Positions 5,950 to 54,074 of a stretch of DNA of 64,000 nucleotides are shown one piece after another. Position numbers and translations under genes: made by a program. Below the pieces are notes generated by a model that was given only the letters and a program-made list of their open reading frames with translations, searched no databases and was not told the DNA's origin. The stretch lies in IMG/VR virus record IMGVR_UViG_3300021197_001489, positions 1 through 64,000 of that record. One strand, written 5' to 3'. The stretch's first letter is position 1. The number at the start of each line of letters is the position of its first letter.

Positions 5950-5978
5950 TTGACAGCCTCACAAAAAAATAGTATAAT
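5950..5978 (+). promoter_or_regulatory. sigma70-like promoter
   Basis: TTGACA-17 nt-TATAAT upstream of dnaJ. Confidence 0.8.
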
Positions 5979-6817: not shown

Positions 6818-9118
6818 ATGCAACAGAATCCTGAAATTGAACATATCCTAGGACAAGCGCAACGCTTGGCAAAAACCAAAAAGCATGCTTATGTAACGCT
6901 GGAGCATTTGACACTTGCATTGGTTAGACATACTCCGTTTTGGAATTGCCTTGAAAAGTTTGGAGCCAGCCCAGTTGCTATTGACGAAGAGCTAGAACTT
7001 TACCTTGATGCGCAAATGGGATTGATTGATCATAAAGATCGCAGCGAACCAAAGAAAACCAATGCAATAGAAAGAGTGTTTAATCGAGCATTAACACAGG
7101 TGATGTTTGGCGGGCGGCGCAGCATGGAAACTGTTGATATCTGGTTAGCCATCATAGCAGAAAACAACAGTCATGCACAGTACTTTATGCTAAAGCATGG
7201 CGTTACCAAGCAAGAGTTTGTGCCGTTTTGGCAAGAGAATTATGCTCGTCGAAATAAGTCACCTGACATGGTTGCAGATCAAGCAGACGAGATCCTGGAA
7301 GAGCATTGTACAAATATCACACAACTTGCAGTAGATGACAAACTTGAGCCTGTGATTGGGCGCGATGCTGAACTAGAAGAAATTGTCACTGTGTTAGCCA
7401 AACGTTTTAAAAGCAATGCGCTATTGGTTGGCGATCCTGGCGTTGGCAAAACTGCTATTGCCGAAGGTCTTGCCACATTGATCAAAGACAACCATGTACC
7501 TACGTTCTTGCAAAACTTTGAAGTGTGGGGATTGGAAATTGGCAGTTTGCTAGCAGGCTCAAAATATCGCGGCGAGTTTGAAGAAAAACTTAAAGACGTT
7601 ATTGCTGCACTGGAAACAAAGAAAAACTGCATACTGTTTATTGACGAAGCGCACACCATGAAAGGCGCAGGCGCAGGAGGTGGCGGCGGCTTAGATTTTG
7701 CCAACATGCTCAAACCAGCAATTACCAAAAACAATATCAAAGTAGTAGCAAGCACAACTTGGGAAGAGTTTTACGAAAGTTTCGAACAGGATCGTGCGCT
7801 AATGAGACGTTTTTATAGAATCAGCATTGACGAACCTGATCAAGCAACCACAGTTAAAATATTGGAAGGGCTAAAGCCACGGCTTGAAAAGTTTCACAAT
7901 GTGAAAGTTGACAGTCCTGCTATTGTTAAAGCAGTTGACCTCGCCACACGTTACATGGCTGACAAAAAAAATCCTGATAAGAGCATTGACTTAATTGATG
8001 CTGCCTGTGCTGTTGAGCGTGTAAAAGATCAAGAAGGTTTAGTGGTCACTGAAGATCTCATTGATGTGCAAGTATCTCGTATTGCAAATATTCCAGAAAC
8101 CAAAGTCAAAAGCGATGCTAGCGATAAAGTGCTTGAACTTGACAGCAATATTAAACAACGTCTGTTTGGTCAAGATCATGTTGTTGACGAAGTGCTAGAA
8201 AGACTCTACGTGAACTATGCCGGCATCAGTACCACTGGACGGCCAATGGGTGCGTTTCTGTTCTTAGGTCCAACTGGTACAGGTAAAACTGAATTCGCAA
8301 AATTGCTAGCAGAAAACCTGGACATGGAAATGCTGCGTTACGACATGAGTGAGTATCAAGATCGCCACACGGTGAGCAGCCTACTTGGTGCACCCCCGGG
8401 CTTTGTGGGATACAACGACAGCAATCTTGGCGGCGGCAAACTGATCAGTGATGTTAGCAAACATCCATACAGTGTGCTACTGTTTGATGAAATTGAAAAG
8501 GCACACCCTGACGTAAGCAATATTTTCCTACAAATGATGGATGAAGGAAAGATTGCTGGTGCAAATGGAAAAGTTGTTGATGTTAAAAACTGTATTATTA
8601 TTATGACATCAAACTTGGGTGCTAGAGATAATGAAAACAACAACATTGGCTTTGGACAAGACTTAACAAAAACAGGATCCGAGGACAAAGCAGTTAAAGA
8701 CTTCTTTAAACCTGAGCTTCGTAATCGACTGGATCTTACTGTTAAATTTAAAACACTTGAGACACTGGCCATTAAGAAAATTGTTGCCAAGTTCACAGGC
8801 GAGTTACGCAAAAGTCTCAAAAGTAAAAACATCAATCTTATTGTTACTGAGGCATTGGTTGATCGTTTAGTTGAAGTGGGATATGATCCTAAAATGGGAG
8901 CAAGACCATTGGGACGCAAGATTGATGAGTTAATCAAAGTTCCGCTGTCAAAGAAAATACTGTTTGAAAAACTAAGTAATTGTCACGTCACTGCTGACTG
9001 GGTGCGGATTAAAGCTAAGAAATATGCTGTAGGTCTTACCAGCAAGCCTAAAACAACAGTGAGTGGCGGCGAAGTAAATCAGGATGGTATTGTAATTGTT
9101 AACGAATCAGAAAATTAA
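6818..9118 (+). CDS. clpA: ClpA-like AAA+ unfoldase
   Basis: Clp-N domain, two NBDs (GDPGVGKT/FIDEAH; GPTGTGKT/LFDEIEK), IGF ClpP-docking loop, no ClpB middle domain. Confidence 0.92.
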   Translation: MQQNPEIEHILGQAQRLAKTKKHAYVTLEHLTLALVRHTPFWNCLEKFGASPVAIDEELELYLDAQMGLIDHKDRSEPKKTNAIERVFNRALTQVMFGGRRSMETVDIWLAIIAENNSHAQYFMLKHGVTKQEFVPFWQENYARRNKSPDMVADQADEILEEHCTNITQLAVDDKLEPVIGRDAELEEIVTVLAKRFKSNALLVGDPGVGKTAIAEGLATLIKDNHVPTFLQNFEVWGLEIGSLLAGSKYRGEFEEKLKDVIAALETKKNCILFIDEAHTMKGAGAGGGGGLDFANMLKPAITKNNIKVVASTTWEEFYESFEQDRALMRRFYRISIDEPDQATTVKILEGLKPRLEKFHNVKVDSPAIVKAVDLATRYMADKKNPDKSIDLIDAACAVERVKDQEGLVVTEDLIDVQVSRIANIPETKVKSDASDKVLELDSNIKQRLFGQDHVVDEVLERLYVNYAGISTTGRPMGAFLFLGPTGTGKTEFAKLLAENLDMEMLRYDMSEYQDRHTVSSLLGAPPGFVGYNDSNLGGGKLISDVSKHPYSVLLFDEIEKAHPDVSNIFLQMMDEGKIAGANGKVVDVKNCIIIMTSNLGARDNENNNIGFGQDLTKTGSEDKAVKDFFKPELRNRLDLTVKFKTLETLAIKKIVAKFTGELRKSLKSKNINLIVTEALVDRLVEVGYDPKMGARPLGRKIDELIKVPLSKKILFEKLSNCHVTADWVRIKAKKYAVGLTSKPKTTVSGGEVNQDGIVIVNESEN

Positions 9119-10363: not shown

Positions 10364-11665
10364 ATGTTAAAAAAGTTAGTCATCATACCAGGCGGGTTTC
10401 ACCCATTCCATGCAGGACATAAAGCATTATATGATGCTGCGGTAAGCCAGTTTCCAAGAGCAGACGTTTACATTGCTGCCACTGATGACCAAAACGCAAG
10501 ACCATTTCCGTTTAAACTGAAGCAGCAACTGGCACAGATTGCTGGCATCCCCAAGCATAGATTTATACAGGTTGGAAATCCATTCCAAGCCAAAGAAATT
10601 ACTCAACATTATGATCCAGATAGCACACAACTTATTTTTGTAAGATCAGATAAAGATTCAGGAGTGGCTCCACTGCCTGGCAGTGTAAAGAAAGACGGCA
10701 GCGCCGGATACTTACAGCCCCTGAATCGACGCAATCCAGAGCCAATGACAAAACACGGCTTTATGACATACTTGCCAACAATATCGTTTGGTCCAGGTAT
10801 GAGCAGCGCAACAGAGATTCGCGCCAAGTGGCCTACAATGAGCGACGACAGCAAAGCTGATCTTGTTAGCAGTTTGTATCCTGCAGCAAACGACAGTGTA
10901 GCATCCAAAGCAGTGGAAATTTTCAACACTGTGCTAGGTGAAGAAAAAGAAATGATCACTATGCCGCTGGGTATGTCAATAGAAGAGCCAAAGCAAGAAG
11001 CAAAGATTATCAAAACTGATGATTCAGTTAGCATACTACCAAGTGGCGGTATGGGCAGTTACGACGAAGCCACTCTCAAAAGCAACCTTGGCAGCAAACT
11101 ACGCACACTAGCGGATCTACTTGACAGCGGCGACTACGATAATCTTGAATACCACATCTATCAAAGCGGTGCAATGCAAGCAATGATTGAAGCACTTGGC
11201 CAGTACAAGCGTTTTAAAGATAAAAAAGGCAATCGTCCAATCAAGAAAAACGTTGAGATTGATATAAGCAACGAATCAGGTTTTTCACAAGAGTTACCAA
11301 CTATTGACCAAGAAATGAATGCTTATTTCAAAGACAAAAAAGATATGGGCGAGTCAGAAGATTACTTGCCAGAAGACGAGCTGATTGTTGAATATGTATT
11401 CCAAAGTCGTCCACTGAGAGTACTTGACAATATTGCAGGGCGCAAAGATCAAACACCATTTCCAATCAAGTTTGATGACGGTTCGCAAGTTATGGTATCT
11501 CCGGCAATGGCCAAGAAGTTTATGTCAATCTACCTAAGCAAAGATGTTGCTTTTCAAAAACAGATTGATCAAAAAATAAGCCAAAAGTCAGTGTTTGTTG
11601 ATGTGTTCAATAACTTGGTTAAAGGTCTACGCAGTACTGGCGTAACAGTTGGCGACCGCAGTTAA
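10364..11665 (+). CDS. Cytidylyltransferase-like (HxGH) nucleotidyltransferase with C-terminal extensions
   Basis: PGGFHPFHAGH, VRSDKD, SATEIR motifs; late box ATAAATA at 10352. Confidence 0.75.
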   Translation: MLKKLVIIPGGFHPFHAGHKALYDAAVSQFPRADVYIAATDDQNARPFPFKLKQQLAQIAGIPKHRFIQVGNPFQAKEITQHYDPDSTQLIFVRSDKDSGVAPLPGSVKKDGSAGYLQPLNRRNPEPMTKHGFMTYLPTISFGPGMSSATEIRAKWPTMSDDSKADLVSSLYPAANDSVASKAVEIFNTVLGEEKEMITMPLGMSIEEPKQEAKIIKTDDSVSILPSGGMGSYDEATLKSNLGSKLRTLADLLDSGDYDNLEYHIYQSGAMQAMIEALGQYKRFKDKKGNRPIKKNVEIDISNESGFSQELPTIDQEMNAYFKDKKDMGESEDYLPEDELIVEYVFQSRPLRVLDNIAGRKDQTPFPIKFDDGSQVMVSPAMAKKFMSIYLSKDVAFQKQIDQKISQKSVFVDVFNNLVKGLRSTGVTVGDRS

Positions 11666-11723
11666 TTACACCCACTAGATAAACTCTATTAAATACCCAT
11701 ATAATTAACTTCACGAGGAACCT

Positions 11724-12659
11724 ATGGCTGAAGAAATCAAATCTGAAGAGACATTGCCACAAATGCCTGAAACACAACCAGAGCCCGCTGATCCTAACAA
11801 GATTCAAGTAAACATTGACAAAATTAGAGAAACAAAAGTGCATATCTGTTTGCCTTGCTATGGCGGACAGCTTACTGAGTCAACGTTTATGAGTTTTATC
11901 CGTTGGGGTAACACTGCTCGGCAGTTGAACATAGACTGGACAGTGGAAACACTTACAAATGAAAGTTTGATCAGCCGTGCTAGAAATACCATGTCAGCTA
12001 AATTCCTTAACAATCCCGCCAGCACACATTTAATGTTTATTGACGCTGACATAGGCTGGGAACCTTGGCACTTGTTATTGCTACTGCACCACGACAAGGA
12101 TGTAATTGGTGGTATGTACCCTCTCAAGAGCTTGCCAGTTAAATGGTGTGTTAACGGCTTTGACGGTGCAAAAACTGAAGACAATGACAAAGTGCAAGAA
12201 GTAAGCAAAACAGGCACAGGATTCATGTTAATCAAACGTCATGTATTTGAAAAACTCAATGAACATCCAGCAGTGGTTCCTTTTATCAATGACATTGGTT
12301 TGCCCGACGAACTTAACACACATATGAAAACATACTTTGATACTGATGTTCGCGAAGGTCGCTACTATTCAGAAGACTGGACATTCTGTGAAAACTGGCG
12401 TGATCTGGGTGGAGAAGTTTGGGTTGACAAACGTGTGCTACTCAAGCACACCGGCACATACACATATGATCACACTGCACAGCAAGCCCTTTATGATGCA
12501 CTAAAAACAGAGCTTGAAACCAATCCTGTGCCGCCGCAACATCCTGAGCAAGGCAAAATTGAAATGCCAGAACAGCAAGCAGCACTAGCACCTGAACGCA
12601 GAAGTGCAAAAGTACTTGCTAAAACAGGTGGCAAAAAGAAAAAGAAAAAAGCCAGTTAA
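11724..12659 (+). CDS. GT-A fold glycosyltransferase-like protein
   Basis: ICLPCYGG, ESLISRARN, FIDADIGW (DxD), SEDWTFC, KHTGTY; basic C-terminal tail. Confidence 0.7.
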   Translation: MAEEIKSEETLPQMPETQPEPADPNKIQVNIDKIRETKVHICLPCYGGQLTESTFMSFIRWGNTARQLNIDWTVETLTNESLISRARNTMSAKFLNNPASTHLMFIDADIGWEPWHLLLLLHHDKDVIGGMYPLKSLPVKWCVNGFDGAKTEDNDKVQEVSKTGTGFMLIKRHVFEKLNEHPAVVPFINDIGLPDELNTHMKTYFDTDVREGRYYSEDWTFCENWRDLGGEVWVDKRVLLKHTGTYTYDHTAQQALYDALKTELETNPVPPQHPEQGKIEMPEQQAALAPERRSAKVLAKTGGKKKKKKAS

Positions 12660-12667
12660 AGAAAATC

Positions 12668-12691
12668 AGCAGCGGAAACGCTGCTTTTTTT
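12668..12691 (+). terminator. Intrinsic terminator
   Basis: AGCAGCG-GAAA-CGCTGCT followed by a T run. Confidence 0.85.
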
Positions 12692-12710
12692 GTGATTAAA
12701 TTGTAAAAAA

Positions 12711-12757
12711 CGGTTGACCTTTTGGATGTATGTGTTATAATATATGTATAGTTAGAG
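12711..12757 (+). promoter_or_regulatory. Early-type promoter (extended -10)
   Basis: CGGTTGACC-16 nt-TATAAT with TGn; closely resembles the promoter at 59028. Confidence 0.7.
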
Positions 12758-12808: not shown

Positions 12809-13849
12809 ATGGACCGTCTTGTTAGAAAGTTCACCGACGTTGTAGAAGAAGTTCGTATTCAGTTAGAAGCCGAGTTTGGCGTAACCCAAGAACAGTTGGA
12901 ATCATTTCGCAAAAGAGTTGATGCCAACGGACACAATTTTCCAATTGGCAGTAACATGGTAGACATTGACACACTGTACTTAGACTATGAAGTACAACGT
13001 GCCGCTATTGCCAAGCACATCTTACACATCATGAAAACCTACGATCCGCGGCTTTGCACACCTGCTAGTGCTTGTAAGGTTGATGGACAGGACTACACCA
13101 CACTGTATGATGGTCAACAGCGTAGTATTGCTAATGCATTGCTTGGCTTTACATATGTGCCCGCTACAGTGGTAGAAACCAAAGATGTAGCGTTTCCAAG
13201 TTATGCATTTGAGGAGCTAAACGAGACAGGTGTACAGCGTCTTGCACCAGGCGACTTGCATCGCAATGCACTTACACGTTATCGTTTGGGATCACGTGAA
13301 ATTAGAAACGTAAAAGCCCGTACACTGCAAGACCAGTTTGATTTTGTAGGCATTGACTTGCAGGACAAAGGTCAGAGAAAAAGTGCCAACTTGCGCGGTT
13401 CAAATGATTACTTCTTTAGCCACTTCAAGTATGCATACAAAGGCATTGACCTTGATCAAAGCGGCGGCGTACTAGAAGAAATACTGGATGCTATTATCTC
13501 TGTATTTCCGCTACAGGAAGAAGTTGATCAAGGTTGTTACATTGGACTGTACGAACTTGCAAGACTGGATACACGCCAAGAGCTCAATGGTGATTGGATG
13601 AAGCAGGTGCTTCGCAGTGCCAAGAAATACTGTAATTCAAGCGCAACTGTGCATGCAAAGGCCAAGATGCAAAACGCATATGTAAACCCAGGTGCTACTT
13701 GGAGTGCGCCCAGCAACATGAGCAACTTCTTGCGTGAAGTATACATCATGGATGGTGGTACACTGGATCTTCCATACCACGGAGAAGGTGCGCTTATGCA
13801 AGTTGCAACTAACCCTGCTCCGGGACTGATTGCCAAGGCAGCAGCATAA
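12809..13849 (+). CDS. ParB/DUF262-like DGQQR-motif protein
   Basis: DYEVQR and YDGQQR motifs, AFEELNE downstream. Confidence 0.6.
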   Translation: MDRLVRKFTDVVEEVRIQLEAEFGVTQEQLESFRKRVDANGHNFPIGSNMVDIDTLYLDYEVQRAAIAKHILHIMKTYDPRLCTPASACKVDGQDYTTLYDGQQRSIANALLGFTYVPATVVETKDVAFPSYAFEELNETGVQRLAPGDLHRNALTRYRLGSREIRNVKARTLQDQFDFVGIDLQDKGQRKSANLRGSNDYFFSHFKYAYKGIDLDQSGGVLEEILDAIISVFPLQEEVDQGCYIGLYELARLDTRQELNGDWMKQVLRSAKKYCNSSATVHAKAKMQNAYVNPGATWSAPSNMSNFLREVYIMDGGTLDLPYHGEGALMQVATNPAPGLIAKAAA

Positions 13850-14400
13850 TGTTGAAAGAAGCAATTGAAAACTTTCGCCAGCCAGTTTACACAAAAACTG
13901 CTCGTAGCACAGACACATACGCCAGCATTAACAATCGCTGTGCTACACAGATATCACGCCTGGTTGAAGAATACAACAGTGTAAAAAACGATCAGCAACT
14001 GTTGCGCGAAATACGCAACGAAATTGATTATCAGTTGCGTAGGTATCACAACTATGCTATTAAGGAAAACATTGGTGCGCACTACATTGAAGTAGGACTG
14101 GAAGGCAACGGCATCTTTGAACACATGATACCTGCTAGCACTGTGCGTGACCTTTGTATTGCAGGTATTATCAGTGCCAAGCAAGCACTGAATGTGCCGA
14201 CTTGCAGACTAAGCAAACAGCGTGATGATCTGTTGCGTGAAAAGGGTTGGGTAAGCAAGACACCAGACATCTACAATTTTTGGAAACGCTACAAATACTG
14301 CTTTGACACTGAAGGAGTGTTTACCACATGGGATGGACAGGCAGTAAACACTGATATGACACTGAATGACCACTTTGAGTATTTTGTTGTTAAACAGTAA
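13849..14400 (+). CDS. Putative His-Me/HNH-like nuclease (EHMIP)
   Basis: FEHMIP resembles the EHxxP motif of DUF1524/GmrD; stop-start coupled to the upstream gene. Confidence 0.4.
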   Translation: MLKEAIENFRQPVYTKTARSTDTYASINNRCATQISRLVEEYNSVKNDQQLLREIRNEIDYQLRRYHNYAIKENIGAHYIEVGLEGNGIFEHMIPASTVRDLCIAGIISAKQALNVPTCRLSKQRDDLLREKGWVSKTPDIYNFWKRYKYCFDTEGVFTTWDGQAVNTDMTLNDHFEYFVVKQ

Positions 14401-14418
14401 TACCATAAATACTGTATC

Positions 14419-17232
14419 ATGAAAGCAACCTGGTTCGAAAATAAAGAATTAATAACACTGTACACTGATGAACGCTATTTTGGCGCAGATGTGCCTGACA
14501 GTTACGCAAAGCGTCCTAGCAAGCCTGTGCCAGTAGACAGTTTGTTTGGCTACGAGCCGTCAAGCAAGATGGATGACATACATCACAAAGATGAAGTATT
14601 ACAAATTGCATTAAAAATGAAATCAGGTACCTGGGACGGCGACCCTATCGTGGTTCGCAAAGATCCTAAAGGCTATCAAGTGTTGGACGGACATCATAGA
14701 ATGCATGCAGCTCGCAAAGCAGGCTTGGACACACTTGATGCAGTCATAGTTGGTCACGAAGATATAGAATATTCAGATGAAGTCAAAGAACAAAAGGTAA
14801 ATGAAGATACCGAAGAGTTCATGCACGGTGATTGTCCTATATTTGCAATAGCACTTAGTCGACTAAGCGGACTTCCACTACAAGCAATGCTTGATTATAG
14901 CGATGAATTAGATAAAACTGTTCTTGTACATGCTTTTGTAGGGTATAAAAACGGACAAGTAATCGATGCAAGTGGTGTTCGCAGTATCGAAAGCATAGAA
15001 GATGACTATCCAGTTGAAGATGAACCGTATGTTACAGACATAAGTGAAAAAGAATTAATTGCATTAGGTTATGATGGAAACTGTCCTACAATAGATATTG
15101 CAAAACAACATGCAGAAAAAGTATTATCAACATTAAACGAAGCATCGGGTTACATACCAACTGCCGCACAAGCAAACGATCCTCGTTTTAAAACTGCACT
15201 CACTGTAGATGTGCGTCCGGGTGAAGATCAACGCAATATTTCAAAACTGGGTCTTGATCTAAACAAAGAACTGGTAAAGAAGACATCGCCAAAACGCAAA
15301 AACAAAAACTCAGTTCACACACTGCAAAATCTAGGACTAGCTGAAAGTCTTGCACTTGATTACCAAATAATGAAAGAAGATGATCTATTCGAAGTAAACA
15401 TGAGCCCTGGCGCATTGCGTGACTGGGCAAAAAGTGACGAAGCAAAAGGCATTGTTGCAGGCTTTGAAATGGAACTTATTTTTGCAGATACTGAAGGGGC
15501 TGATGGTGATTATGATGAAGCAATACCAGACTGGGACAGAGATGAAGGTCATAGAGGGCGCAGTTTTGATGCTGTAATTGACTGGTTTGACGATGACGAA
15601 TATGGTTATGCTATCAGCAACGATAATCCAGAACGTACCCGTGAACAAATGGATGAAGACTTCTTTGAAAAGGCCGACGAATGGGTAAACTCAGAGTTTG
15701 AAGAAGTAGCTGCTGAAAAAGTTCGTGAGATCATGGACGACGATGTTTGGGATGCAACCAAAGAAGAACGTTACGATGATACAGCAAACGAACTGTTTGA
15801 AAAAAGCTATGAAGCATTGGATGAAGAAGAACAAGAACAAGTTAGAGATACAGCATTTGACTACTATCTAAACGAAGTTGATGAGGCAGTCAGTGATCAG
15901 TACAATAATGAATACTGGGAACAGGCCATGGAAGACTTCCGTGAAGATCGCTGGGGCGACTATACCTGGGTACAATATTACAACGACGCTGATATAACTT
16001 ACATGAGTGATATAGCCGAACGCTTTGGAATAGCCTGGCCATTTTTAACTGGTGGCGGCGGCCTTGGAAATCGCAGTTGGGAAGAAATTGAACAGTCATT
16101 GATCAACGAACCGCTTGCTGACACAGACTTTTCCATAACCATTGGCGCTGGCTATCATGGCACTGCACGGCGCGACAACTTGTTTATTCTAGAACCTGAC
16201 AGCAGCCTGGAATCAGATGATGGCAGTGACACTGGCGTAGAAATTGTATCGCCGCCAATGCCATTGGGACTGGCAACAACCACACTGGAAAACATGCTAA
16301 TTTGGGCCAAAGACCCAGACACTGATGCTTACACAAACGGCAGCACAGGCTTGCACATGGGCATGAGTGTTCCAGGAACAGAGAATGTTGACTATGTGAA
16401 ACTGGTATTGTTCTCAGGTGACAAGTATATACTGGAAAAATACGGACGATCGGCCAACAGTTACACACCAAGTGCGCTTGACCAGTTACAGCGCAGAGGT
16501 CAAATGTTTGTGCAAAATCCAGAGATACTGAATGATATACTGGCAAAGATGCACGACAAATTAGACGATGCCGCCGAAGGCCTTATTCGCGGCAGCACAG
16601 GTGACATGAAGTACACTTCAATGAGCATAAAGAAAGGCTACATTGAATTCCGTTCACCAGGCGGAGACTACTTGTCAATGGACATTCCTGATGTTATCAA
16701 CACCATGCTGAGATTTGCCAGAGCTATGAAGATTGCCAGTGATCCAAATGCATACAGACAAGAGTACCAAAAGAAACTGTACAAATTAACAACCGCAGGC
16801 GGCGAAGGCATTGTTAATAAATTTAATAAACTGTTTGCAGATTATCAGACAGGAACACTCAGTGCCGAAAGTCTAAAGCGGCAATGGGCTAATTTAGTAT
16901 CAGATGAGAATACTACTATATTAAACAAACTAGATGATAAGCCTGATACCAAACGTGTCGGACTTGCAAAGCAAATACTGCAACCCAAGCCAAGTGTGGG
17001 TGCAGACAATGCAGCAGACAGTCAGCAGGTGCAACAGCGAGTAGAACCAAAGAACTATAATTACATGATGCCAATGGTTGACTTGGCGGGCGACGTGCAA
17101 AACACAGCGACAGGCACTGTAACAGCAACCAGCGAAGACGAAGCCAAAAGGCTAATCAATACTGAAGTAAGAGCCCGGAATCCAGACTTGCAACCTCTGT
17201 GGAGCCAAAGTAGAATAGAACAAGGCAGATAA
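14419..17232 (+). CDS. Multidomain late protein: ParB-like N-terminus plus amidoligase-2 (COOH-NH2 ligase) domain
   Basis: PIVVR...VLDGHHRMHAA; GFEMEL, EPDSSL, GVEIVSPP, TNGSTGLH, YIEFRSPGG; late box ATAAATA 14405. Confidence 0.7.
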   Translation: MKATWFENKELITLYTDERYFGADVPDSYAKRPSKPVPVDSLFGYEPSSKMDDIHHKDEVLQIALKMKSGTWDGDPIVVRKDPKGYQVLDGHHRMHAARKAGLDTLDAVIVGHEDIEYSDEVKEQKVNEDTEEFMHGDCPIFAIALSRLSGLPLQAMLDYSDELDKTVLVHAFVGYKNGQVIDASGVRSIESIEDDYPVEDEPYVTDISEKELIALGYDGNCPTIDIAKQHAEKVLSTLNEASGYIPTAAQANDPRFKTALTVDVRPGEDQRNISKLGLDLNKELVKKTSPKRKNKNSVHTLQNLGLAESLALDYQIMKEDDLFEVNMSPGALRDWAKSDEAKGIVAGFEMELIFADTEGADGDYDEAIPDWDRDEGHRGRSFDAVIDWFDDDEYGYAISNDNPERTREQMDEDFFEKADEWVNSEFEEVAAEKVREIMDDDVWDATKEERYDDTANELFEKSYEALDEEEQEQVRDTAFDYYLNEVDEAVSDQYNNEYWEQAMEDFREDRWGDYTWVQYYNDADITYMSDIAERFGIAWPFLTGGGGLGNRSWEEIEQSLINEPLADTDFSITIGAGYHGTARRDNLFILEPDSSLESDDGSDTGVEIVSPPMPLGLATTTLENMLIWAKDPDTDAYTNGSTGLHMGMSVPGTENVDYVKLVLFSGDKYILEKYGRSANSYTPSALDQLQRRGQMFVQNPEILNDILAKMHDKLDDAAEGLIRGSTGDMKYTSMSIKKGYIEFRSPGGDYLSMDIPDVINTMLRFARAMKIASDPNAYRQEYQKKLYKLTTAGGEGIVNKFNKLFADYQTGTLSAESLKRQWANLVSDENTTILNKLDDKPDTKRVGLAKQILQPKPSVGADNAADSQQVQQRVEPKNYNYMMPMVDLAGDVQNTATGTVTATSEDEAKRLINTEVRARNPDLQPLWSQSRIEQGR

Positions 17233-18076: not shown

Positions 18077-18517
18077 ATGTTAGCTGATGATCTTAAAACA
18101 CTTCTTGCAACTGAATATGCATTTGTAATAAAAACACAAAACTTTCACTGGAACGTAGAAGGACCTGATTTTGCACAATACCACAACTTCTTTCAGGAAC
18201 TATACGAAGAAGTTTATGGCATCATTGATCAAACAGCAGAATACATTAGAACACTAGACGTATACGCACCAGGATCATTTGAAAGATTCACAGAGCTCAG
18301 TGTTATCATGGGGCAAACAAAAATCCCAAGAGCAATGCTGATGATTCAAGAATTACTTGATGATAACAGTGCAATACTGCAAATTTTAACACAGACTTTT
18401 CAATCAGCAACAGACGAAAACAACGAAGGCATTGCCAACTTTATTGCAGAACGTATGGATGCCCATAACAAGCATGCATGGATGTTGCGCAGTTTTCTCA
18501 AAGGAAGTAGAGCATAA
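18077..18517 (+). CDS. dps: Dps-family ferritin-like protein
   Basis: NFHWNVEG, HNFFQELYEE, D..AE ferroxidase residues, KHAWML. Confidence 0.9.
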   Translation: MLADDLKTLLATEYAFVIKTQNFHWNVEGPDFAQYHNFFQELYEEVYGIIDQTAEYIRTLDVYAPGSFERFTELSVIMGQTKIPRAMLMIQELLDDNSAILQILTQTFQSATDENNEGIANFIAERMDAHNKHAWMLRSFLKGSRA

Positions 18518-38201: not shown

Positions 38202-38230
38202 TTGACAAGCAATATGAATTGTTGTATAAT
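38202..38230 (+). promoter_or_regulatory. sigma70-like promoter
   Basis: TTGACA-17 nt-TATAAT. Confidence 0.8.
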
Positions 38231-47094: not shown

Positions 47095-48085
47095 GTTGTG
47101 CCAAACAACGTTGTTCGATACTTTCTGCATAATCATTCATTAAAAAATCAAAGTTGTATTCTGCATTTTCTTGGGCAGCGTCTACATCCCATTCAGAATC
47201 TGTAATTCTTTCCCAATTGAGGTGCAATGCAGTATCCAATCTCTGTTCTGCCGGCAAATTATCGTAACTTAAATCAAAAACGTTATCAAACAGTTGAAAT
47301 CCACGCTGAGCTATTTCGCAATGTATACCTTGATGTCCAATGCACATAAACGGATGCTTTGCTGCAATAGCCAATAGTGTTTTTTCTGTTATAATACCAG
47401 GATGGTCGGCATAAATGGTCTCGGTTACTATGCTTGTTTTACTCTGCTGATATAAAGGCATAAGTTTTACAAAATTACTTACATTATTAAAATCATATTT
47501 GTTATAAGGACACATCGGTGCTGGATTGTGATTGATATGCGACGTAAATCCTAACGGTTCACTTCCAAGCATATCATACATTTTTATCCTGTGTTCTCGC
47601 AACGTCCCATTTAAGCAGAGAAAATTGTACTTTATATCTTTGTGGTGAACATCTTTCCATTCACTGTGGCGTTCTTTAAGACTGTATACCAGTTCATAAC
47701 TGTGACTGGCAAACTCAACACACTTTACATTACCAATGTAAAGATCAGTTAAACCATGATCCCAGTGTAAAAAAATAGTTTTTGATTGTTGTTCCGGAGT
47801 CAAGTGTTCTTCAATAAAATGCAATTCTGTACACAGGGTATTGTTGTAGTAGTGACAAAAATCTTGAGCGTGTAAAACTAAACGAAAATTTCTTCTCTTC
47901 CAATCATTTGCAGTAATATTTGCTAGATGATCTTTGAGGTTAATTGCCCATCGCCCTTGTTCAATAGGACGGTCTAAAATACTAGGCACAAAATATGCAT
48001 TGAATCCGGAGGAGCGCAATAATAAATCAATTGTTTTTTTAAATTTTTCTCCAGCGTATGTATCTGGCATTACTGTCATTGACAT
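47081..48085 (-). CDS. GT10 (fucosyltransferase)-like / GT-B protein
   Basis: SIVTET..., ITEKT...HPF..IG...GFQLFD...SYD; start uncertain. Confidence 0.45.
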   Translation of the reverse strand: MSMTVMPDTYAGEKFKKTIDLLLRSSGFNAYFVPSILDRPIEQGRWAINLKDHLANITANDWKRRNFRLVLHAQDFCHYYNNTLCTELHFIEEHLTPEQQSKTIFLHWDHGLTDLYIGNVKCVEFASHSYELVYSLKERHSEWKDVHHKDIKYNFLCLNGTLREHRIKMYDMLGSEPLGFTSHINHNPAPMCPYNKYDFNNVSNFVKLMPLYQQSKTSIVTETIYADHPGIITEKTLLAIAAKHPFMCIGHQGIHCEIAQRGFQLFDNVFDLSYDNLPAEQRLDTALHLNWERITDSEWDVDAAQENAEYNFDFLMNDYAESIEQRCLAQLKSC

Positions 48086-48140
48086 TTGTGTTACCTGTGC
48101 TATAATATAGTTATTGTTTAGAACAGTAGCAGGTATAATT

Positions 48141-49408: not shown

Positions 49409-49484
49409 GCTGGTTTAGCTCAGTTGGTAGAGCAATGGTTTTGTAAACCATAGGTCGGGAGTTCGAGCCTCTCAACCAGCACCA
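49409..49484 (+). tRNA. tRNA-Thr (TGT)
   Basis: 76-nt cloverleaf, anticodon arm ATGGT-TTTGTAA-ACCAT, GTTCGAG T-loop, encoded CCA. Confidence 0.97.
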
Positions 49485-51145: not shown

Positions 51146-51596
51146 TATGAATATTACTGTTACAGGCACTAGTAAAGGATTAGGTAAAAGTATTGCAGAC
51201 TATTGTGAACAATCACACACAGTGGTCAGGTTTGGTCGAGAATATGACTTGCGTGATTACTCCGTGCGGCAAAAAATTATACAACAAGAAAGTGATATTC
51301 TTATTAGTGTAGCAAAACCTAATTTTTCACAAACGGAATTATTGTATGAGTGGTATAATGTACATGGTACTAGTAAGCGGGTGATTAATATTGGAAGTGC
51401 GGTTGTACATAAAGAATTTTGGGGAGATGATATTCACATGATGAGGTATCATACACAAAAACGCAGTCTCGCACATGCTGTGGCTCAAATTGATCATCCA
51501 AACATCTCTATTATAAACCCAGAACACCTCTACAACAAAAATGCATTTGATTATGCTGTATTGGAAAAATGGTGCAAGGAGAATATTTTTATATGA
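51138..51596 (+). CDS. Short-chain dehydrogenase-like protein (short)
   Basis: TGTSKGLG, INIGS, YHTQK (YxxxK). Confidence 0.7.
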   Translation: MNSMNITVTGTSKGLGKSIADYCEQSHTVVRFGREYDLRDYSVRQKIIQQESDILISVAKPNFSQTELLYEWYNVHGTSKRVINIGSAVVHKEFWGDDIHMMRYHTQKRSLAHAVAQIDHPNISIINPEHLYNKNAFDYAVLEKWCKENIFI

Positions 51597-52738
51597 AACC
51601 AAAAGATTTATACGAAAATAGAGTATTTTGCTCAGCACCATGGAACAATTTATATATCAATCCAGATGGAAAAATTCTAACCTGCAGTATAGGAAAATGC
51701 AATGTAGGAAATCTTAGTGATAACAGGATACAGGATATTGTCCAGGACAATGATGTCTTAAAAGAAATTCAACAAAGTATGATAGACGGCAAGCGCCATA
51801 AAAATTGTGGTACTTGCTATAAGCTAGAAGATAGTGGAGTAAGTTACAGTTTAAGAAAGCACTACAAAAGCAAAATTAGTAATTTTAATAATTTAGATCA
51901 GTATGATATTGCTTCAGGCAGTTTAGATGTGACCAGTTTTGATCTAAGATACGACAACACTTGTCAAAATGCATGTGTTTACTGTGGTCCGGCACTAAGC
52001 AGTAGATGGGAAAAAGAACTGGGTGTAACAGTTCCAAAGCCAAGTCTTGGCAATATAGATAATACCAAGAAGTATGTATCAGAAAATCTTGCGAATCTCA
52101 AAGAAATATACCTAGCAGGTGGAGAACCTTTGGTTACCAAAGACTTTGCTGTTATATTAGAAGAGCTGCACAAAGTAAATCCAAATTGCAAAATTAGAAT
52201 TAACAGTAATATTAAAAATATTAATACTCCGGTGTACGAATTAAGCAAAAAGTTTCGTAATCTAAGATATACACTGAGTGCAGAAGCAGTTGAACAGCAA
52301 TTCGAGTACATAAGATATCCGCAAACATGGAGTAGTTTTCAAAAAAATGTTAAACAAGTTATTGATGAAGTCCCTTCATATAACTTTAACATGGCATTAA
52401 ATGTTCTTAACATGTATGGATTATTTGATTGCATAGACTATCTTAGAAGTATAGGAGCACACGATAATAGTTTAATAATTACGCATGTAAACAATCCATC
52501 TTGGTGTAATATTAATAATCTGTCAGATGAATTATTAGATGAATTTGTTGAACGTTGTAACCTGTACATGTCACAAACAGATCCAAAATACAGTCTGTAT
52601 TCAGCATTGGAAGGTTGTGTAAATTTTGTTCGGGTATCTTTCGATAAAAATATCAATGATACAAGATTAAATTTAGAAACATTAGATATAAGAAGAAACT
52701 TAAATAGTAAAAATATTTTTCCATATATTTACAAATAG
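51593..52738 (+). CDS. Radical SAM protein with N-terminal SPASM/twitch-like domain
   Basis: CQNACVYC, AGGEP; N-terminal CSAPW...C...CGTC. Confidence 0.85.
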   Translation: MKPKDLYENRVFCSAPWNNLYINPDGKILTCSIGKCNVGNLSDNRIQDIVQDNDVLKEIQQSMIDGKRHKNCGTCYKLEDSGVSYSLRKHYKSKISNFNNLDQYDIASGSLDVTSFDLRYDNTCQNACVYCGPALSSRWEKELGVTVPKPSLGNIDNTKKYVSENLANLKEIYLAGGEPLVTKDFAVILEELHKVNPNCKIRINSNIKNINTPVYELSKKFRNLRYTLSAEAVEQQFEYIRYPQTWSSFQKNVKQVIDEVPSYNFNMALNVLNMYGLFDCIDYLRSIGAHDNSLIITHVNNPSWCNINNLSDELLDEFVERCNLYMSQTDPKYSLYSALEGCVNFVRVSFDKNINDTRLNLETLDIRRNLNSKNIFPYIYK

Positions 52739-53278: not shown

Positions 53279-53355
53279 GGTTCCATAGCTCAGCTGGATA
53301 GAGCAACTGCCTTCTAAGCAGTAGGTCGGGAGTTCGAATCTTCCTGGAATCGCCA
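53279..53355 (+). tRNA. tRNA-Arg (TCT)
   Basis: 77-nt cloverleaf, ACTGC-CTTCTAA-GCAGT anticodon arm, encoded CCA. Confidence 0.97.
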
Positions 53356-54000: not shown

Positions 54001-54074
54001 AGGGGATAAGTGTTACGGTAGCACGACAGGCTCCAACCCTGTAAGCGTGGGTTCGACTCCTACATCCTCTGCCA
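54001..54074 (+). tRNA. tRNA-Trp (CCA)
   Basis: 74-nt cloverleaf, ACAGG-CTCCAAC-CCTGT, G73 plus CCA. Confidence 0.9.

What the first reader, a model, noticed from the sequence alone, without database searches (positions are those of the whole stretch)
12809..14400. Stand-alone DGQQR plus EHxxP gene pair: split GmrSD/SspE-like nuclease in a phage
Seen: a two-gene unit insulated by a terminator and its own early promoter; gene 1 has YDGQQR, gene 2 has FEHMIP; the stop and start overlap. Established: GmrSD and SspE combine a DUF262 (DGQQR) NTPase with a DUF1524 (EHxxP) HNH nuclease and discriminate DNA by modification. Inference: an early-expressed nuclease that spares the phage's modified DNA and attacks host or competitor DNA, or a nucleotide-consuming anti-defence enzyme.
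Basis: inference. Interest (0 to 1): 0.65.

Follow-up and report, generated by a model that had tools for sequence, protein, structure and literature searches.

The report
Phage ParB-like NTPase with EHxxP partner
Two overlapping genes of an uncultured marine jumbo phage form a conserved movable pair, a ParB/sulfiredoxin-fold nucleotide-binding protein with the GmrS motifs plus a small orphan protein with an invariant Glu-His core. The pair is built like a split GmrS/GmrD restriction nuclease, but the nuclease half is not proven.

Summary
Gene 1 (12809-13849, 346 aa) carries YDGQQR and gene 2 (13849-14400, 183 aa) carries FEHMIP. Stop and start overlap in TAATG, and a terminator plus a near-consensus sigma-70 promoter lie just upstream. 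No terminator follows gene 2.

The genes are co-conserved: gene 2 follows gene 1 in 13 of 13 uncut viral loci and in three distant marine contigs, while the flanking genes differ. No fusion was found.

Gene 2 is an orphan family of 157 clusters. (E/D)H-x-x-P is invariant, Asp/Asn/His/Glu sits at position 126, and Y79, R147, Y148 and H175 are also invariant. Its helix-strand order fits the GmrD core. However, fold searches found no His-Me match, the GmrSD_C model does not hit, and the profile comparison is marginal.

The module is accessory: a complete relative (polymerase 77% identical) lacks gene 2. The genome has no TGT/DpdA, TET or ThyA-type gene, so "spares modified phage DNA" is unsupported.

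Verdict: a new, phage-borne variant of the DUF262-plus-effector theme. The split-GmrSD nuclease reading is plausible (about 0.4) but not established.

The parts
12668..12692 (+). Intrinsic-terminator-like stem-loop plus T run that ends the upstream gene (11724-12659)
   Evidence: 7-bp stem with 5 GC pairs, 4-nt loop, TTTTTTTG tail (sequence)
12714..12741 (+). Sigma-70-type promoter TTGACC-16-(TG)TTATAAT
   Evidence: 11 of 12 consensus positions with extended -10. One of 4 such sites in the window against 0.27 expected. RNA-library contigs of relatives diverge upstream of 12731 but still carry TTGACA at the same spacing (loose ends of X16 and X18).
12809..13849 (+). Gene 1, 346 aa: ParB/Srx-fold NTP-binding protein with a helical C-terminal domain
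   Evidence: ORF. 1019 homologues, all without Pfam domains. AF2 model pLDDT 87.
12947..13234 (+). Gene 1 residues 47-142: ParB/Srx-fold domain
12995..13000 (+). QR pair (Q63 R64), first DGQHR/GmrS motif
   Evidence: Invariant in A1 and A5. Motif definition from PMC4619093.
13106..13123 (+). YDGQQR (residues 100-105), predicted NTP-phosphate-binding loop
   Evidence: D101 and Q103 invariant, G102 and R105 at least 90% conserved. Some relatives read DGQHR.
13208..13222 (+). FEELN (F134..N138), the FxxxN motif
   Evidence: F134, E135 and N138 invariant. hhalign aligns it to the FEtlNxrGxxLsxxDL block of 23 real GmrSD proteins.
13244..13750 (+). Gene 1 residues 146-314: conserved helical domain, role unknown (DNA or partner binding inferred)
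13847..13851 (+). TAATG stop/start overlap (translational coupling)
   Evidence: Relatives show a 4-nt overlap (L012) or 23-nt overlap (L016).
13849..14400 (+). Gene 2, 183 aa: orphan partner protein with an N-terminal helical hairpin and an alpha/beta C-terminal half
   Evidence: ORF. 157 clusters among 1.84 billion representatives, nearly all stand-alone at 180-200 aa. AF2 model pLDDT 93.5.
14116..14133 (+). FEHMIP (residues 90-95): candidate catalytic Glu-His at the end of a beta strand
   Evidence: E91 is E in 46 and D in 5 of 51, H92 51/51, P95 49/51 in a 17-51% identity alignment. The strand is 89-92 in the model.
14224..14226 (+). D126, first turn of helix 123-131: candidate metal ligand
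   Evidence: D in 31, N in 7, H in 5 and E in 3 of 51 sequences. hhalign aligns it to the last N of GmrD's LGNLxLLxxxN (not significant).
14287..14292 (+). R147-Y148, invariant pair
   Evidence: 51/51 each. No counterpart in the GmrD motifs.
14371..14373 (+). H175, invariant
   Evidence: 51/51.
14419..17232 (+). Downstream 937-aa gene with a ParB_N (DGHHR) domain: probably co-transcribed, not part of the conserved module
   Evidence: PF02195 at 26.4 bits. No terminator before it. No homologue beside the pair in 15 related loci.

Best explanation
A self-contained, accessory two-gene module of marine jumbo phages, transcribed from its own host-type promoter. It most likely encodes a two-subunit, NTP-regulated DNA nuclease built like a never-fused GmrS/GmrD. 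Gene 1 is the ParB/Srx-fold nucleotide switch: QR, DGQQR and FExxN form the NTP pocket, and the helical C-domain would hold DNA or the partner. Gene 2 would be the effector, with E91-H92 and D126 (plus R147, Y148, H175) forming a metal-dependent active site. Shown: the genes, motifs, coupling, co-conservation, gene 1's fold and the module's accessory distribution. Inferred: that the two proteins bind each other, that gene 2 cuts DNA, that NTP gates it, and what the target is (host or competing-phage DNA).
For: Fixed gene order with overlapping or abutting reading frames in 13/13 uncut IMG/VR loci, while the flanks differ. The pair persists in marine contigs where gene 2 is only 21% identical. 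Gene 1 has the ParB/Srx fold and all three GmrS/DGQHR motifs invariant. hhalign of gene 1 against GmrSD N-domains scores 37.6 (P 2e-4), against 14.2 +/- 2.9 for column shuffles and P 0.04 against ParB. Gene 2 has an invariant (E/D)HxxP and a D/N/H/E position at 126. [quoted passage not shown] Bacterial gene-2 homologues sit next to type I R-M hsdR and next to a WYL regulator. The module is absent from a complete close relative, so it is accessory. The promoter is conserved with the module.
Against: No fold search (Foldseek PDB and BFVD, VIA wide and second look, ESM Atlas) returned a His-Me or any other nuclease for gene 2. The Pfam GmrSD_N and GmrSD_C models find nothing in the whole genome at E<=10. 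None of 51 gene-2 relatives or 18 gene-1 relatives hits them. Gene 2 against GmrSD_C scores 20.4 (P 0.03), no better than the unrelated cross-control of gene 1 against GmrSD_C at 19.4. GmrD's structural Asn is kept in only 15 of 51 sequences and its NxxFxxKK motif is absent. Structurally, gene 1 is nearer to ParB, KorB and Noc than to BrxU. The complex prediction gave no verdict. No DNA-modification pathway was found that would give the phage a self/non-self mark.
Confidence: 0.4

Rival explanations
1. An NTP-dependent DNA-binding switch with a small locking or regulatory partner, like ParB or KorB with KorA. It would organise or silence DNA or control transcription, with no nuclease activity.
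Against: Gene 1 has DGQQR, not the GERRxR box, and no ParB_N HMM hit. Its profile is nearer to GmrSD_N than to ParB. Gene 2's invariant set (E/D-H, D/N/H, R-Y, H) looks catalytic rather than like a binding surface. Gene-2 homologues exist alone in bacteria.
Confidence: 0.2
2. A nucleotide- or small-molecule-directed enzyme pair: a ParB/Srx-fold kinase or transferase like SerK, SbnI or sulfiredoxin, or an NTP/signal-nucleotide-consuming anti-defence enzyme. Gene 2 would be a second catalytic or specificity subunit.
Against: The motif trio QR/DGQQR/FxxxN is that of the DNA-associated DGQHR/DUF262 proteins. No PADLOC or PHROG function match. There is no direct evidence for any substrate.
Confidence: 0.15
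3. A DndB/DpdB-like accessory of a DNA-modification pathway, working with the neighbouring nucleotidyltransferase-like and DXD-containing genes.
For: Some relatives read DGQHR. One gene-1 relative gives a weak DndB hit, E 0.15. ParB-like genes accompany phage DNA-glycosylation clusters (bioRxiv 10.1101/2023.12.21.572611). The upstream genes 10364-11665 and 11724-12659 look like sugar-nucleotide or glycosyl-transfer enzymes.
Against: A terminator separates the pair from those genes. None of the neighbours is conserved beside the pair in 15 related loci. The genome has no TGT/DpdA, Tet_JBP or ThyA-type gene.
Confidence: 0.1
4. Chance motifs in two unrelated neighbouring genes.
For: EHxxP is a short motif. 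No curated family model matches either protein.
Against: Both motifs are invariant over deep alignments, and the genes stay together down to 21% identity. The motifs are rare in the window.
Confidence: 0.02

Closest known systems
GmrS/GmrD (GmrSD, BrxU, SspE): DUF262 NTPase plus DUF1524 His-Me nuclease, type IV restriction
   Same: Order and sizes of the two parts. ParB/Srx fold in part 1 with QR, DGQQR and FxxxN. (E/D)HxxP at a strand end, and a D/N/H in a following helix, in part 2. Same helix-strand order as predicted for the GmrD core. Some bacterial relatives of part 2 lie beside restriction genes.
   Different: Neither Pfam model matches. Part 2 lacks the LGNLxLL Asn (15/51) and NxxFxxKK, has extra invariant R-Y and H, and carries an N-terminal helical hairpin. 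The parts are never fused (0 of 157 clusters), whereas 862 of the 1119 GmrSD homologues gathered by Machnicka et al. are double-domain (PMC4619093). It is encoded by lytic jumbo phages rather than bacterial defence islands. Part 1 is half the length of a DUF262 region and structurally nearer to ParB than to BrxU.
Canonical ParB / Noc / KorB CTPase clamps (ParB_N, PF02195)
   Same: Best structural matches for gene 1 residues 47-142. KorB also has a small partner (KorA).
   Different: DGQQR replaces GERRxR. No HMM match. No ParA, parS or partition context. The profile comparison is weaker than with GmrSD_N.
DGQHR-domain proteins DndB / DpdB (PF14072, TIGR03187)
   Same: The same three motifs. 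Some relatives of gene 1 literally read DGQHR.
   Different: No Dnd or Dpd partner genes and no TGT/DpdA in the genome. Only one member in 18 gives a weak DndB hit (E 0.15).
phrog_1033 'ParB-like partition protein' of temperate Staphylococcus phages (e.g. phage 85 ORF016)
   Same: Weak HMM hit of gene 1 (E 0.002). 29% identity between a marine gene-1 relative and ORF016 over 226 residues. Early-operon position.
   Different: No gene-2 homologue there. The partner is a second ParB-like gene (ORF013). Function untested.

Membership tests
GmrSD_N / DUF262 (PF03235), DGQHR superfamily | ParB/Srx fold | tested here: met
GmrSD_N / DUF262 (PF03235), DGQHR superfamily | QR pair, (I/V)DGQQR and FxxxN motifs (PMC4619093) | tested here: met
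   Q63 R64, D101 G102 Q103 (Q/H) R105, and F134..N138 are invariant or at least 90% conserved.
GmrSD_N / DUF262 (PF03235), DGQHR superfamily | Match to the curated family model | tested here: not met
   No hit at E<=1 for gene 1 or for 18 relatives. No hit in the whole genome at E<=10.
GmrSD_N / DUF262 (PF03235), DGQHR superfamily | Profile-profile similarity to bona fide members | tested here: inconclusive
   hhalign against 22 Bacteroidota GmrSD N-domains: score 37.6, P 2e-4, probability 46%. Shuffles reach at most 25.1. Only the FExxN block aligns well.
GmrSD_N / DUF262 (PF03235), DGQHR superfamily | NTP binding and hydrolysis | not testable with these tools
   Needs biochemistry.
GmrSD_C / DUF1524 (PF07510), His-Me finger | (I/L/V)(E/D)H(I/L/V)xPQ motif | tested here: met
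   F-E-H-M-I-P. E/D 51/51, H 51/51, P 49/51. The trailing Q is not kept.
GmrSD_C / DUF1524 (PF07510), His-Me finger | L(G/A)NLxLLxxxN motif | tested here: inconclusive
   The equivalent stretch is A-x-N-x-P-T-C-x-L-S-K-x-x-D. The first Asn is kept in 15/51. The last position is D/N/H/E in 46/51. Spacing is 11 rather than 8.
GmrSD_C / DUF1524 (PF07510), His-Me finger | NxxFxxKK motif | tested here: not met
   No counterpart in A3 or A4.
GmrSD_C / DUF1524 (PF07510), His-Me finger | Match to the curated family model or to members' profile | tested here: not met
   No hit at E<=10 in the genome. 0 of 51 relatives hit any HNH family. hhalign P 0.03, equal to a cross-control.
GmrSD_C / DUF1524 (PF07510), His-Me finger | Beta-beta-alpha metal-finger fold | tested here: inconclusive
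   No His-Me match in five fold searches, but the helical hairpin 19-76 filled the lists and residues 77-183 could not be folded alone. [quoted passage not shown]
GmrSD_C / DUF1524 (PF07510), His-Me finger | Metal-dependent DNA cleavage | not testable with these tools
   Needs biochemistry.
Type IV (modification-dependent) restriction system | Host-encoded, in a defence island, cuts modified DNA | tested here: not met
   The pair occurs on virus contigs only. No gene-1 relative was found by the pattern scan (two conserved peptide motifs) of one genome each of 185,579 prokaryote species. Specificity is not testable.
ParB_N CTPase clamps (PF02195) | GERRxRA box and family model | tested here: not met
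   DGQQR instead. The only ParB_N hit in the genome is the next gene. hhalign against 25 ParB proteins gives P 0.04.

The most novel reading that the evidence does not exclude
Gene 2 is not a diverged DUF1524 but a new catalytic fold. It would be used alone by bacteria beside restriction systems and, in jumbo phages, harnessed to a minimal DUF262-like NTP switch. That would make a new two-component nucleic-acid-targeting weapon that lytic phages carry as a movable cassette against host or rival-phage DNA.
Probability: 0.25. Interest if true: 0.7.

Novelty: new variant of a known kind. Interest (0 to 1): 0.5.

Why it matters
DUF262-type NTPases gate nucleases in GmrSD, BrxU and SspE, and occur in Dazbog and Menshen, all of them bacterial defences. 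Here the same switch, in a compact form that every curated model misses, is paired with an uncharacterised partner in large lytic phages. Those phages are common in seawater: more than 1000 sequence clusters, with DNA holders in several marine studies. If the pair is a nuclease, it would be a phage-side counterpart of type IV restriction, used for host takeover or phage-phage exclusion. It would also give an experimentally tractable minimal model of how a ParB/Srx NTP switch controls a separate effector. If gene 2 is not a nuclease, the pair defines a new partner class for ParB/Srx switches. Either way, two sizeable orphan families would gain a testable annotation.

Tried and rejected
- **Curated libraries.** Pfam, NCBIfam and PADLOC scans of both proteins gave nothing. 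PHROGs gave only a weak ParB-like hit for gene 1.
- **GenBank phages.** megablast and tblastn against 50,697 phages found no match for either gene.
- **PDB by sequence.** Profile searches with four alignments gave no relevant hit.
- **Gene 2 fold searches.** Foldseek PDB and BFVD, VIA wide, VIA second look and ESM Atlas returned only gene 2's own family or generic helical hairpins. Language-model look-alikes gave no named family.
- **Complex prediction.** Complex prediction on gene 1 plus gene 2 gave no answer (score 0.00, below the mark). This is not evidence either way.
- **Prokaryote genomes.** The scan for gene 1 found none.
- **Modified phage DNA.** TGT, Tet_JBP and Thymidylat_synt are all absent from the genome. 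This is a limited panel and does not exclude other modifications.
- **Freshwater origin.** Rejected: this was first guessed from the ClpB-like matches, but the sequencing runs holding the locus are seawater, marine and salt-marsh.
- **RNA-library contigs.** They cover both genes, and one contig bridges the junction. Contigs cannot prove transcription, strand or ends, so this is not counted as expression evidence.
- **Extra domains.** A scan of the longer gene-2 relatives and of the bacterial neighbour genes found none.
- **Operators' cautions.** No alternative genetic code was needed. No broken toxin or animal-virus sequence was involved.

Full report
**Setting**

The window is the first 64 kb of a 316,012-bp IMG/VR virus record estimated to be 91% complete. 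Nearly all long ORFs are on the + strand, and there are three tRNA genes. A T4-type family-B DNA polymerase lies 11 kb downstream of the finding. Sequencing runs that hold the locus come from seawater, marine, aquatic-viral and salt-marsh samples of 13 studies. This is therefore an uncultured marine jumbo phage.

**The observation**

- ORF 12809-13849 (346 aa) contains YDGQQR at residues 100-105.
- ORF 13849-14400 (183 aa) contains FEHMIP at residues 90-95.
- TAA and ATG overlap in TAATG.
- Upstream are a GC-rich hairpin with a T run (12668-12692) and TTGACC-16-TGTTATAAT (12714-12741).
- Only four TTGACN-N15-18-TATAAT sites occur in the window, against 0.27 expected.
- No terminator-like site lies between gene 2 and the next gene at 14419. 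The unit is bounded upstream only.
- In 20,436 residues of long + strand frames, DGQQR occurs once and [DE]HxxP twice.

**Co-conservation**

Gene 1 has 1019 relatives in the word-indexed protein collection. The best 120 are 65-92% identical and none carries a Pfam domain. Gene 2 has 173. GenBank phages hold neither, and a pattern scan of one genome from each of 185,579 prokaryote species found no gene-1 relative.

In 15 IMG/VR loci found with gene 1, all 13 that are not cut carry gene 2 immediately downstream. No homologue of the window's other neighbours appears there. The junction varies:
- a 4-nt overlap in L012;
- a 23-nt overlap in L016;
- an extra 94-aa ORF in L005-type loci.

Marine contigs found through a gene-2 relative of only 21% identity still carry a 365-aa gene-1 homologue upstream (hmmsearch E 4e-85), with one or two small ORFs between. 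An exhaustive profile search of 1.84 billion representatives found 157 gene-2 clusters. Nearly all are stand-alone proteins of 180-200 aa, and none is fused to a gene-1-like part.

The module is also accessory. A complete 364-kb relative with terminal repeats, whose polymerase is 77% identical, has no gene 2. It carries only a diverged 393-aa gene-1 paralogue reading DGQHT.

**Gene 1**

The AF2 model is confident (pLDDT 87). Residues 47-142 match the ParB/Srx fold:

Machnicka et al. 2015 define GmrS and the DGQHR domain by a QR pair, DGQQR/DGQHR and FxxxN (PMC4619093). All three are invariant in gene 1: Q63 R64, D101 G102 Q103 R105, and F134..N138. Yet no curated model matches. Gene 1 and 18 diverse relatives give no recurring Pfam hit, and PF03235 finds nothing in the genome at E<=10.

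I built alignments of 23 genuine Bacteroidota GmrSD proteins, located with PF07510, and of 25 ParB proteins.
- hhalign of the gene-1 family against GmrSD N-domains scores 37.6 (P 2e-4, probability 46%). It aligns the FExLNxxGxxLxxxDL block.
- Column-shuffled controls give 14.2 +/- 2.9, with a maximum of 25.1.
- The score against ParB has P 0.04.

Gene 1 is therefore a compact ParB/Srx NTP-binding protein. Its motifs are those of DUF262/DGQHR, and its backbone is closest to the ParB clamps.

**Gene 2**

The model is confident (pLDDT 93.5). It has a long helical hairpin (21-73) followed by E79-81, E89-92, H96-104, H110-114, E118-121, H123-131 and further elements. In a 51-sequence alignment reaching down to 17% identity:
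- Y79, H92, R147, Y148 and H175 are invariant;
- E91 is E or D in all sequences;
- P95 and P117 are nearly invariant;
- position 126 is D in 31, N in 7, H in 5 and E in 3 sequences.

This looks like an active site. [quoted passage not shown] With a permissive setting, hhalign aligns EHxxP to GmrD's EHIxP, and LSxxxD to LLxxxN.

The statistics do not carry the claim:
- the score is 20.4 (P 0.03, probability 1.6%);
- this is above 100 shuffles (maximum 17.9), but level with an unrelated cross-control at 19.4;
- GmrD's first Asn is kept in only 15 of 51 sequences, and NxxFxxKK is missing;
- PF07510 finds nothing, and none of the 51 relatives hits any HNH family;
- five fold searches returned only the protein's own family or helical hairpins.

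The fold of the catalytic-looking half is therefore undecided, not excluded.

Two bacterial gene-2 homologues stand without gene 1. One lies directly after the hsdS-hsdR genes of a type I R-M system. The other is in a three-gene operon beside a WYL regulator. This is suggestive of defence contexts, but it rests on only two cases.

**Context for the mechanism**

The genome has no TGT/DpdA, no Tet_JBP and no ThyA-type hydroxymethylase.

The upstream nucleotidyltransferase-like gene and the DXD-containing gene (phrog_1574) might suggest sugar chemistry. However, they are separated from the pair by the terminator and are not conserved beside it.

Contigs from metatranscriptomic libraries of three studies cover both genes, and one bridges the junction. 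Relatives diverge upstream of 12731 yet keep TTGACA at the right distance. This fits a cassette that carries its own promoter, but contigs cannot prove transcription.

**Judgement**

The best-supported reading is an accessory, self-promoted cassette encoding a ParB/Srx NTP switch and a separate effector. It is architecturally a never-fused GmrS/GmrD, with the effector most likely a metal-dependent nuclease (confidence about 0.4). The rivals are:
- a non-nucleolytic ParB/KorB-like switch with a small partner (0.2);
- a nucleotide- or small-molecule-directed enzyme pair or anti-defence factor (0.15);
- a DndB/DpdB-like modification accessory (0.1);
- chance (0.02).

It should not be filed as a member of DUF262 or DUF1524, because the family models and two of the three GmrD motifs fail. 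It does work like, or at least is built like, that system. Novelty: a new variant of a known kind.

Noticed in passing
window 14419-17232 (+): The next gene encodes a 937-aa, very acidic protein whose residues 57-133 are a ParB_N domain with DGHHR (PF02195, 26.4 bits). Two different ParB/Srx-type proteins are thus encoded in a row. This one is not conserved beside the pair in related loci.
   Followed up: partly
window 6818-9118 (+): A full-length ClpB/ClpA-type double AAA+ protein (Clp_N, AAA, AAA_2, ClpB_D2-small) is encoded by the phage. The best cellular-bin matches are 53-58% identical contigs binned as a Polynucleobacter MAG and a Lake Loclat bin. These are probably phage contigs as well.
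   Followed up: partly
window 10364-12659 (+): A 433-aa protein with a nucleotidyltransferase HxGH-type N-terminus (weak CTP_transf_like hit) is followed by a 311-aa phrog_1574 protein. That protein has a DADIGW (DXD-like) motif and a GGKKKKKKAS tail. This may be a sugar-nucleotide/glycosyl-transfer pair, and its target is unknown.
   Followed up: no
window 18077-18517 (+): A ferritin-like (Dps/ferritin) domain protein, E 7e-23, is encoded in the phage early/metabolic region.
   Followed up: no
window 5950-5978, 12714-12741, 38202-38230, 48079-48106 (+): Four near-perfect TTGAC(A/C)-N-TATAAT promoters occur, against 0.27 expected by chance. This suggests that several cassettes are read by the host RNA polymerase.
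   Followed up: partly
L005/L006/L007/L011 5025-5309; L077 3906-4118; L078 4425-5008: In some relatives one or two small ORFs (94 aa, 70 aa, or 123 + 70 aa) are inserted between gene 1 and gene 2. The 94-aa one has no Pfam match.
   Followed up: partly
L189 1249-2427 and L190 1015-2193 (records G088, G087): Close relatives that lack gene 2 carry a 393-aa gene-1 paralogue (27% identity over the ParB/Srx domain). Its motif reads DGQHT, so the Arg is lost. It is followed by an unrelated 103-aa ORF.
   Followed up: partly
L070 4001-4924; L073/L074 5001-5657: Bacterial gene-2 homologues stand without gene 1. One lies directly downstream of type I R-M hsdS-hsdR. The other is in a three-gene operon of unknown proteins beside a WYL/WCX regulator.
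   Followed up: partly
L077 2-478 (-) and G086 contigs C3, C5: The marine bin holding L077 has a second, cut gene-1 homologue at a contig end. It also has two gene-2 copies on different contigs. These could be paralogues or two phages in one bin.
   Followed up: no
BFVD hit A0A218MLT5_1: A 1017-aa protein of an uncultured virus, named UDP-N-acetylglucosamine kinase, resembles the gene-2 model over about 200 columns (probability 0.98, TM 0.45). This may be a fusion of a gene-2-like domain to a kinase. The sequence was not retrievable here.
   Followed up: no
window 51569-52738 (+); tRNAs at 49409-49484, 53279-53355, 54001-54074: A radical-SAM-domain protein (phrog_14086) lies among three tRNA genes (Thr-TGT, Arg-TCT, Trp-CCA).
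   Followed up: no
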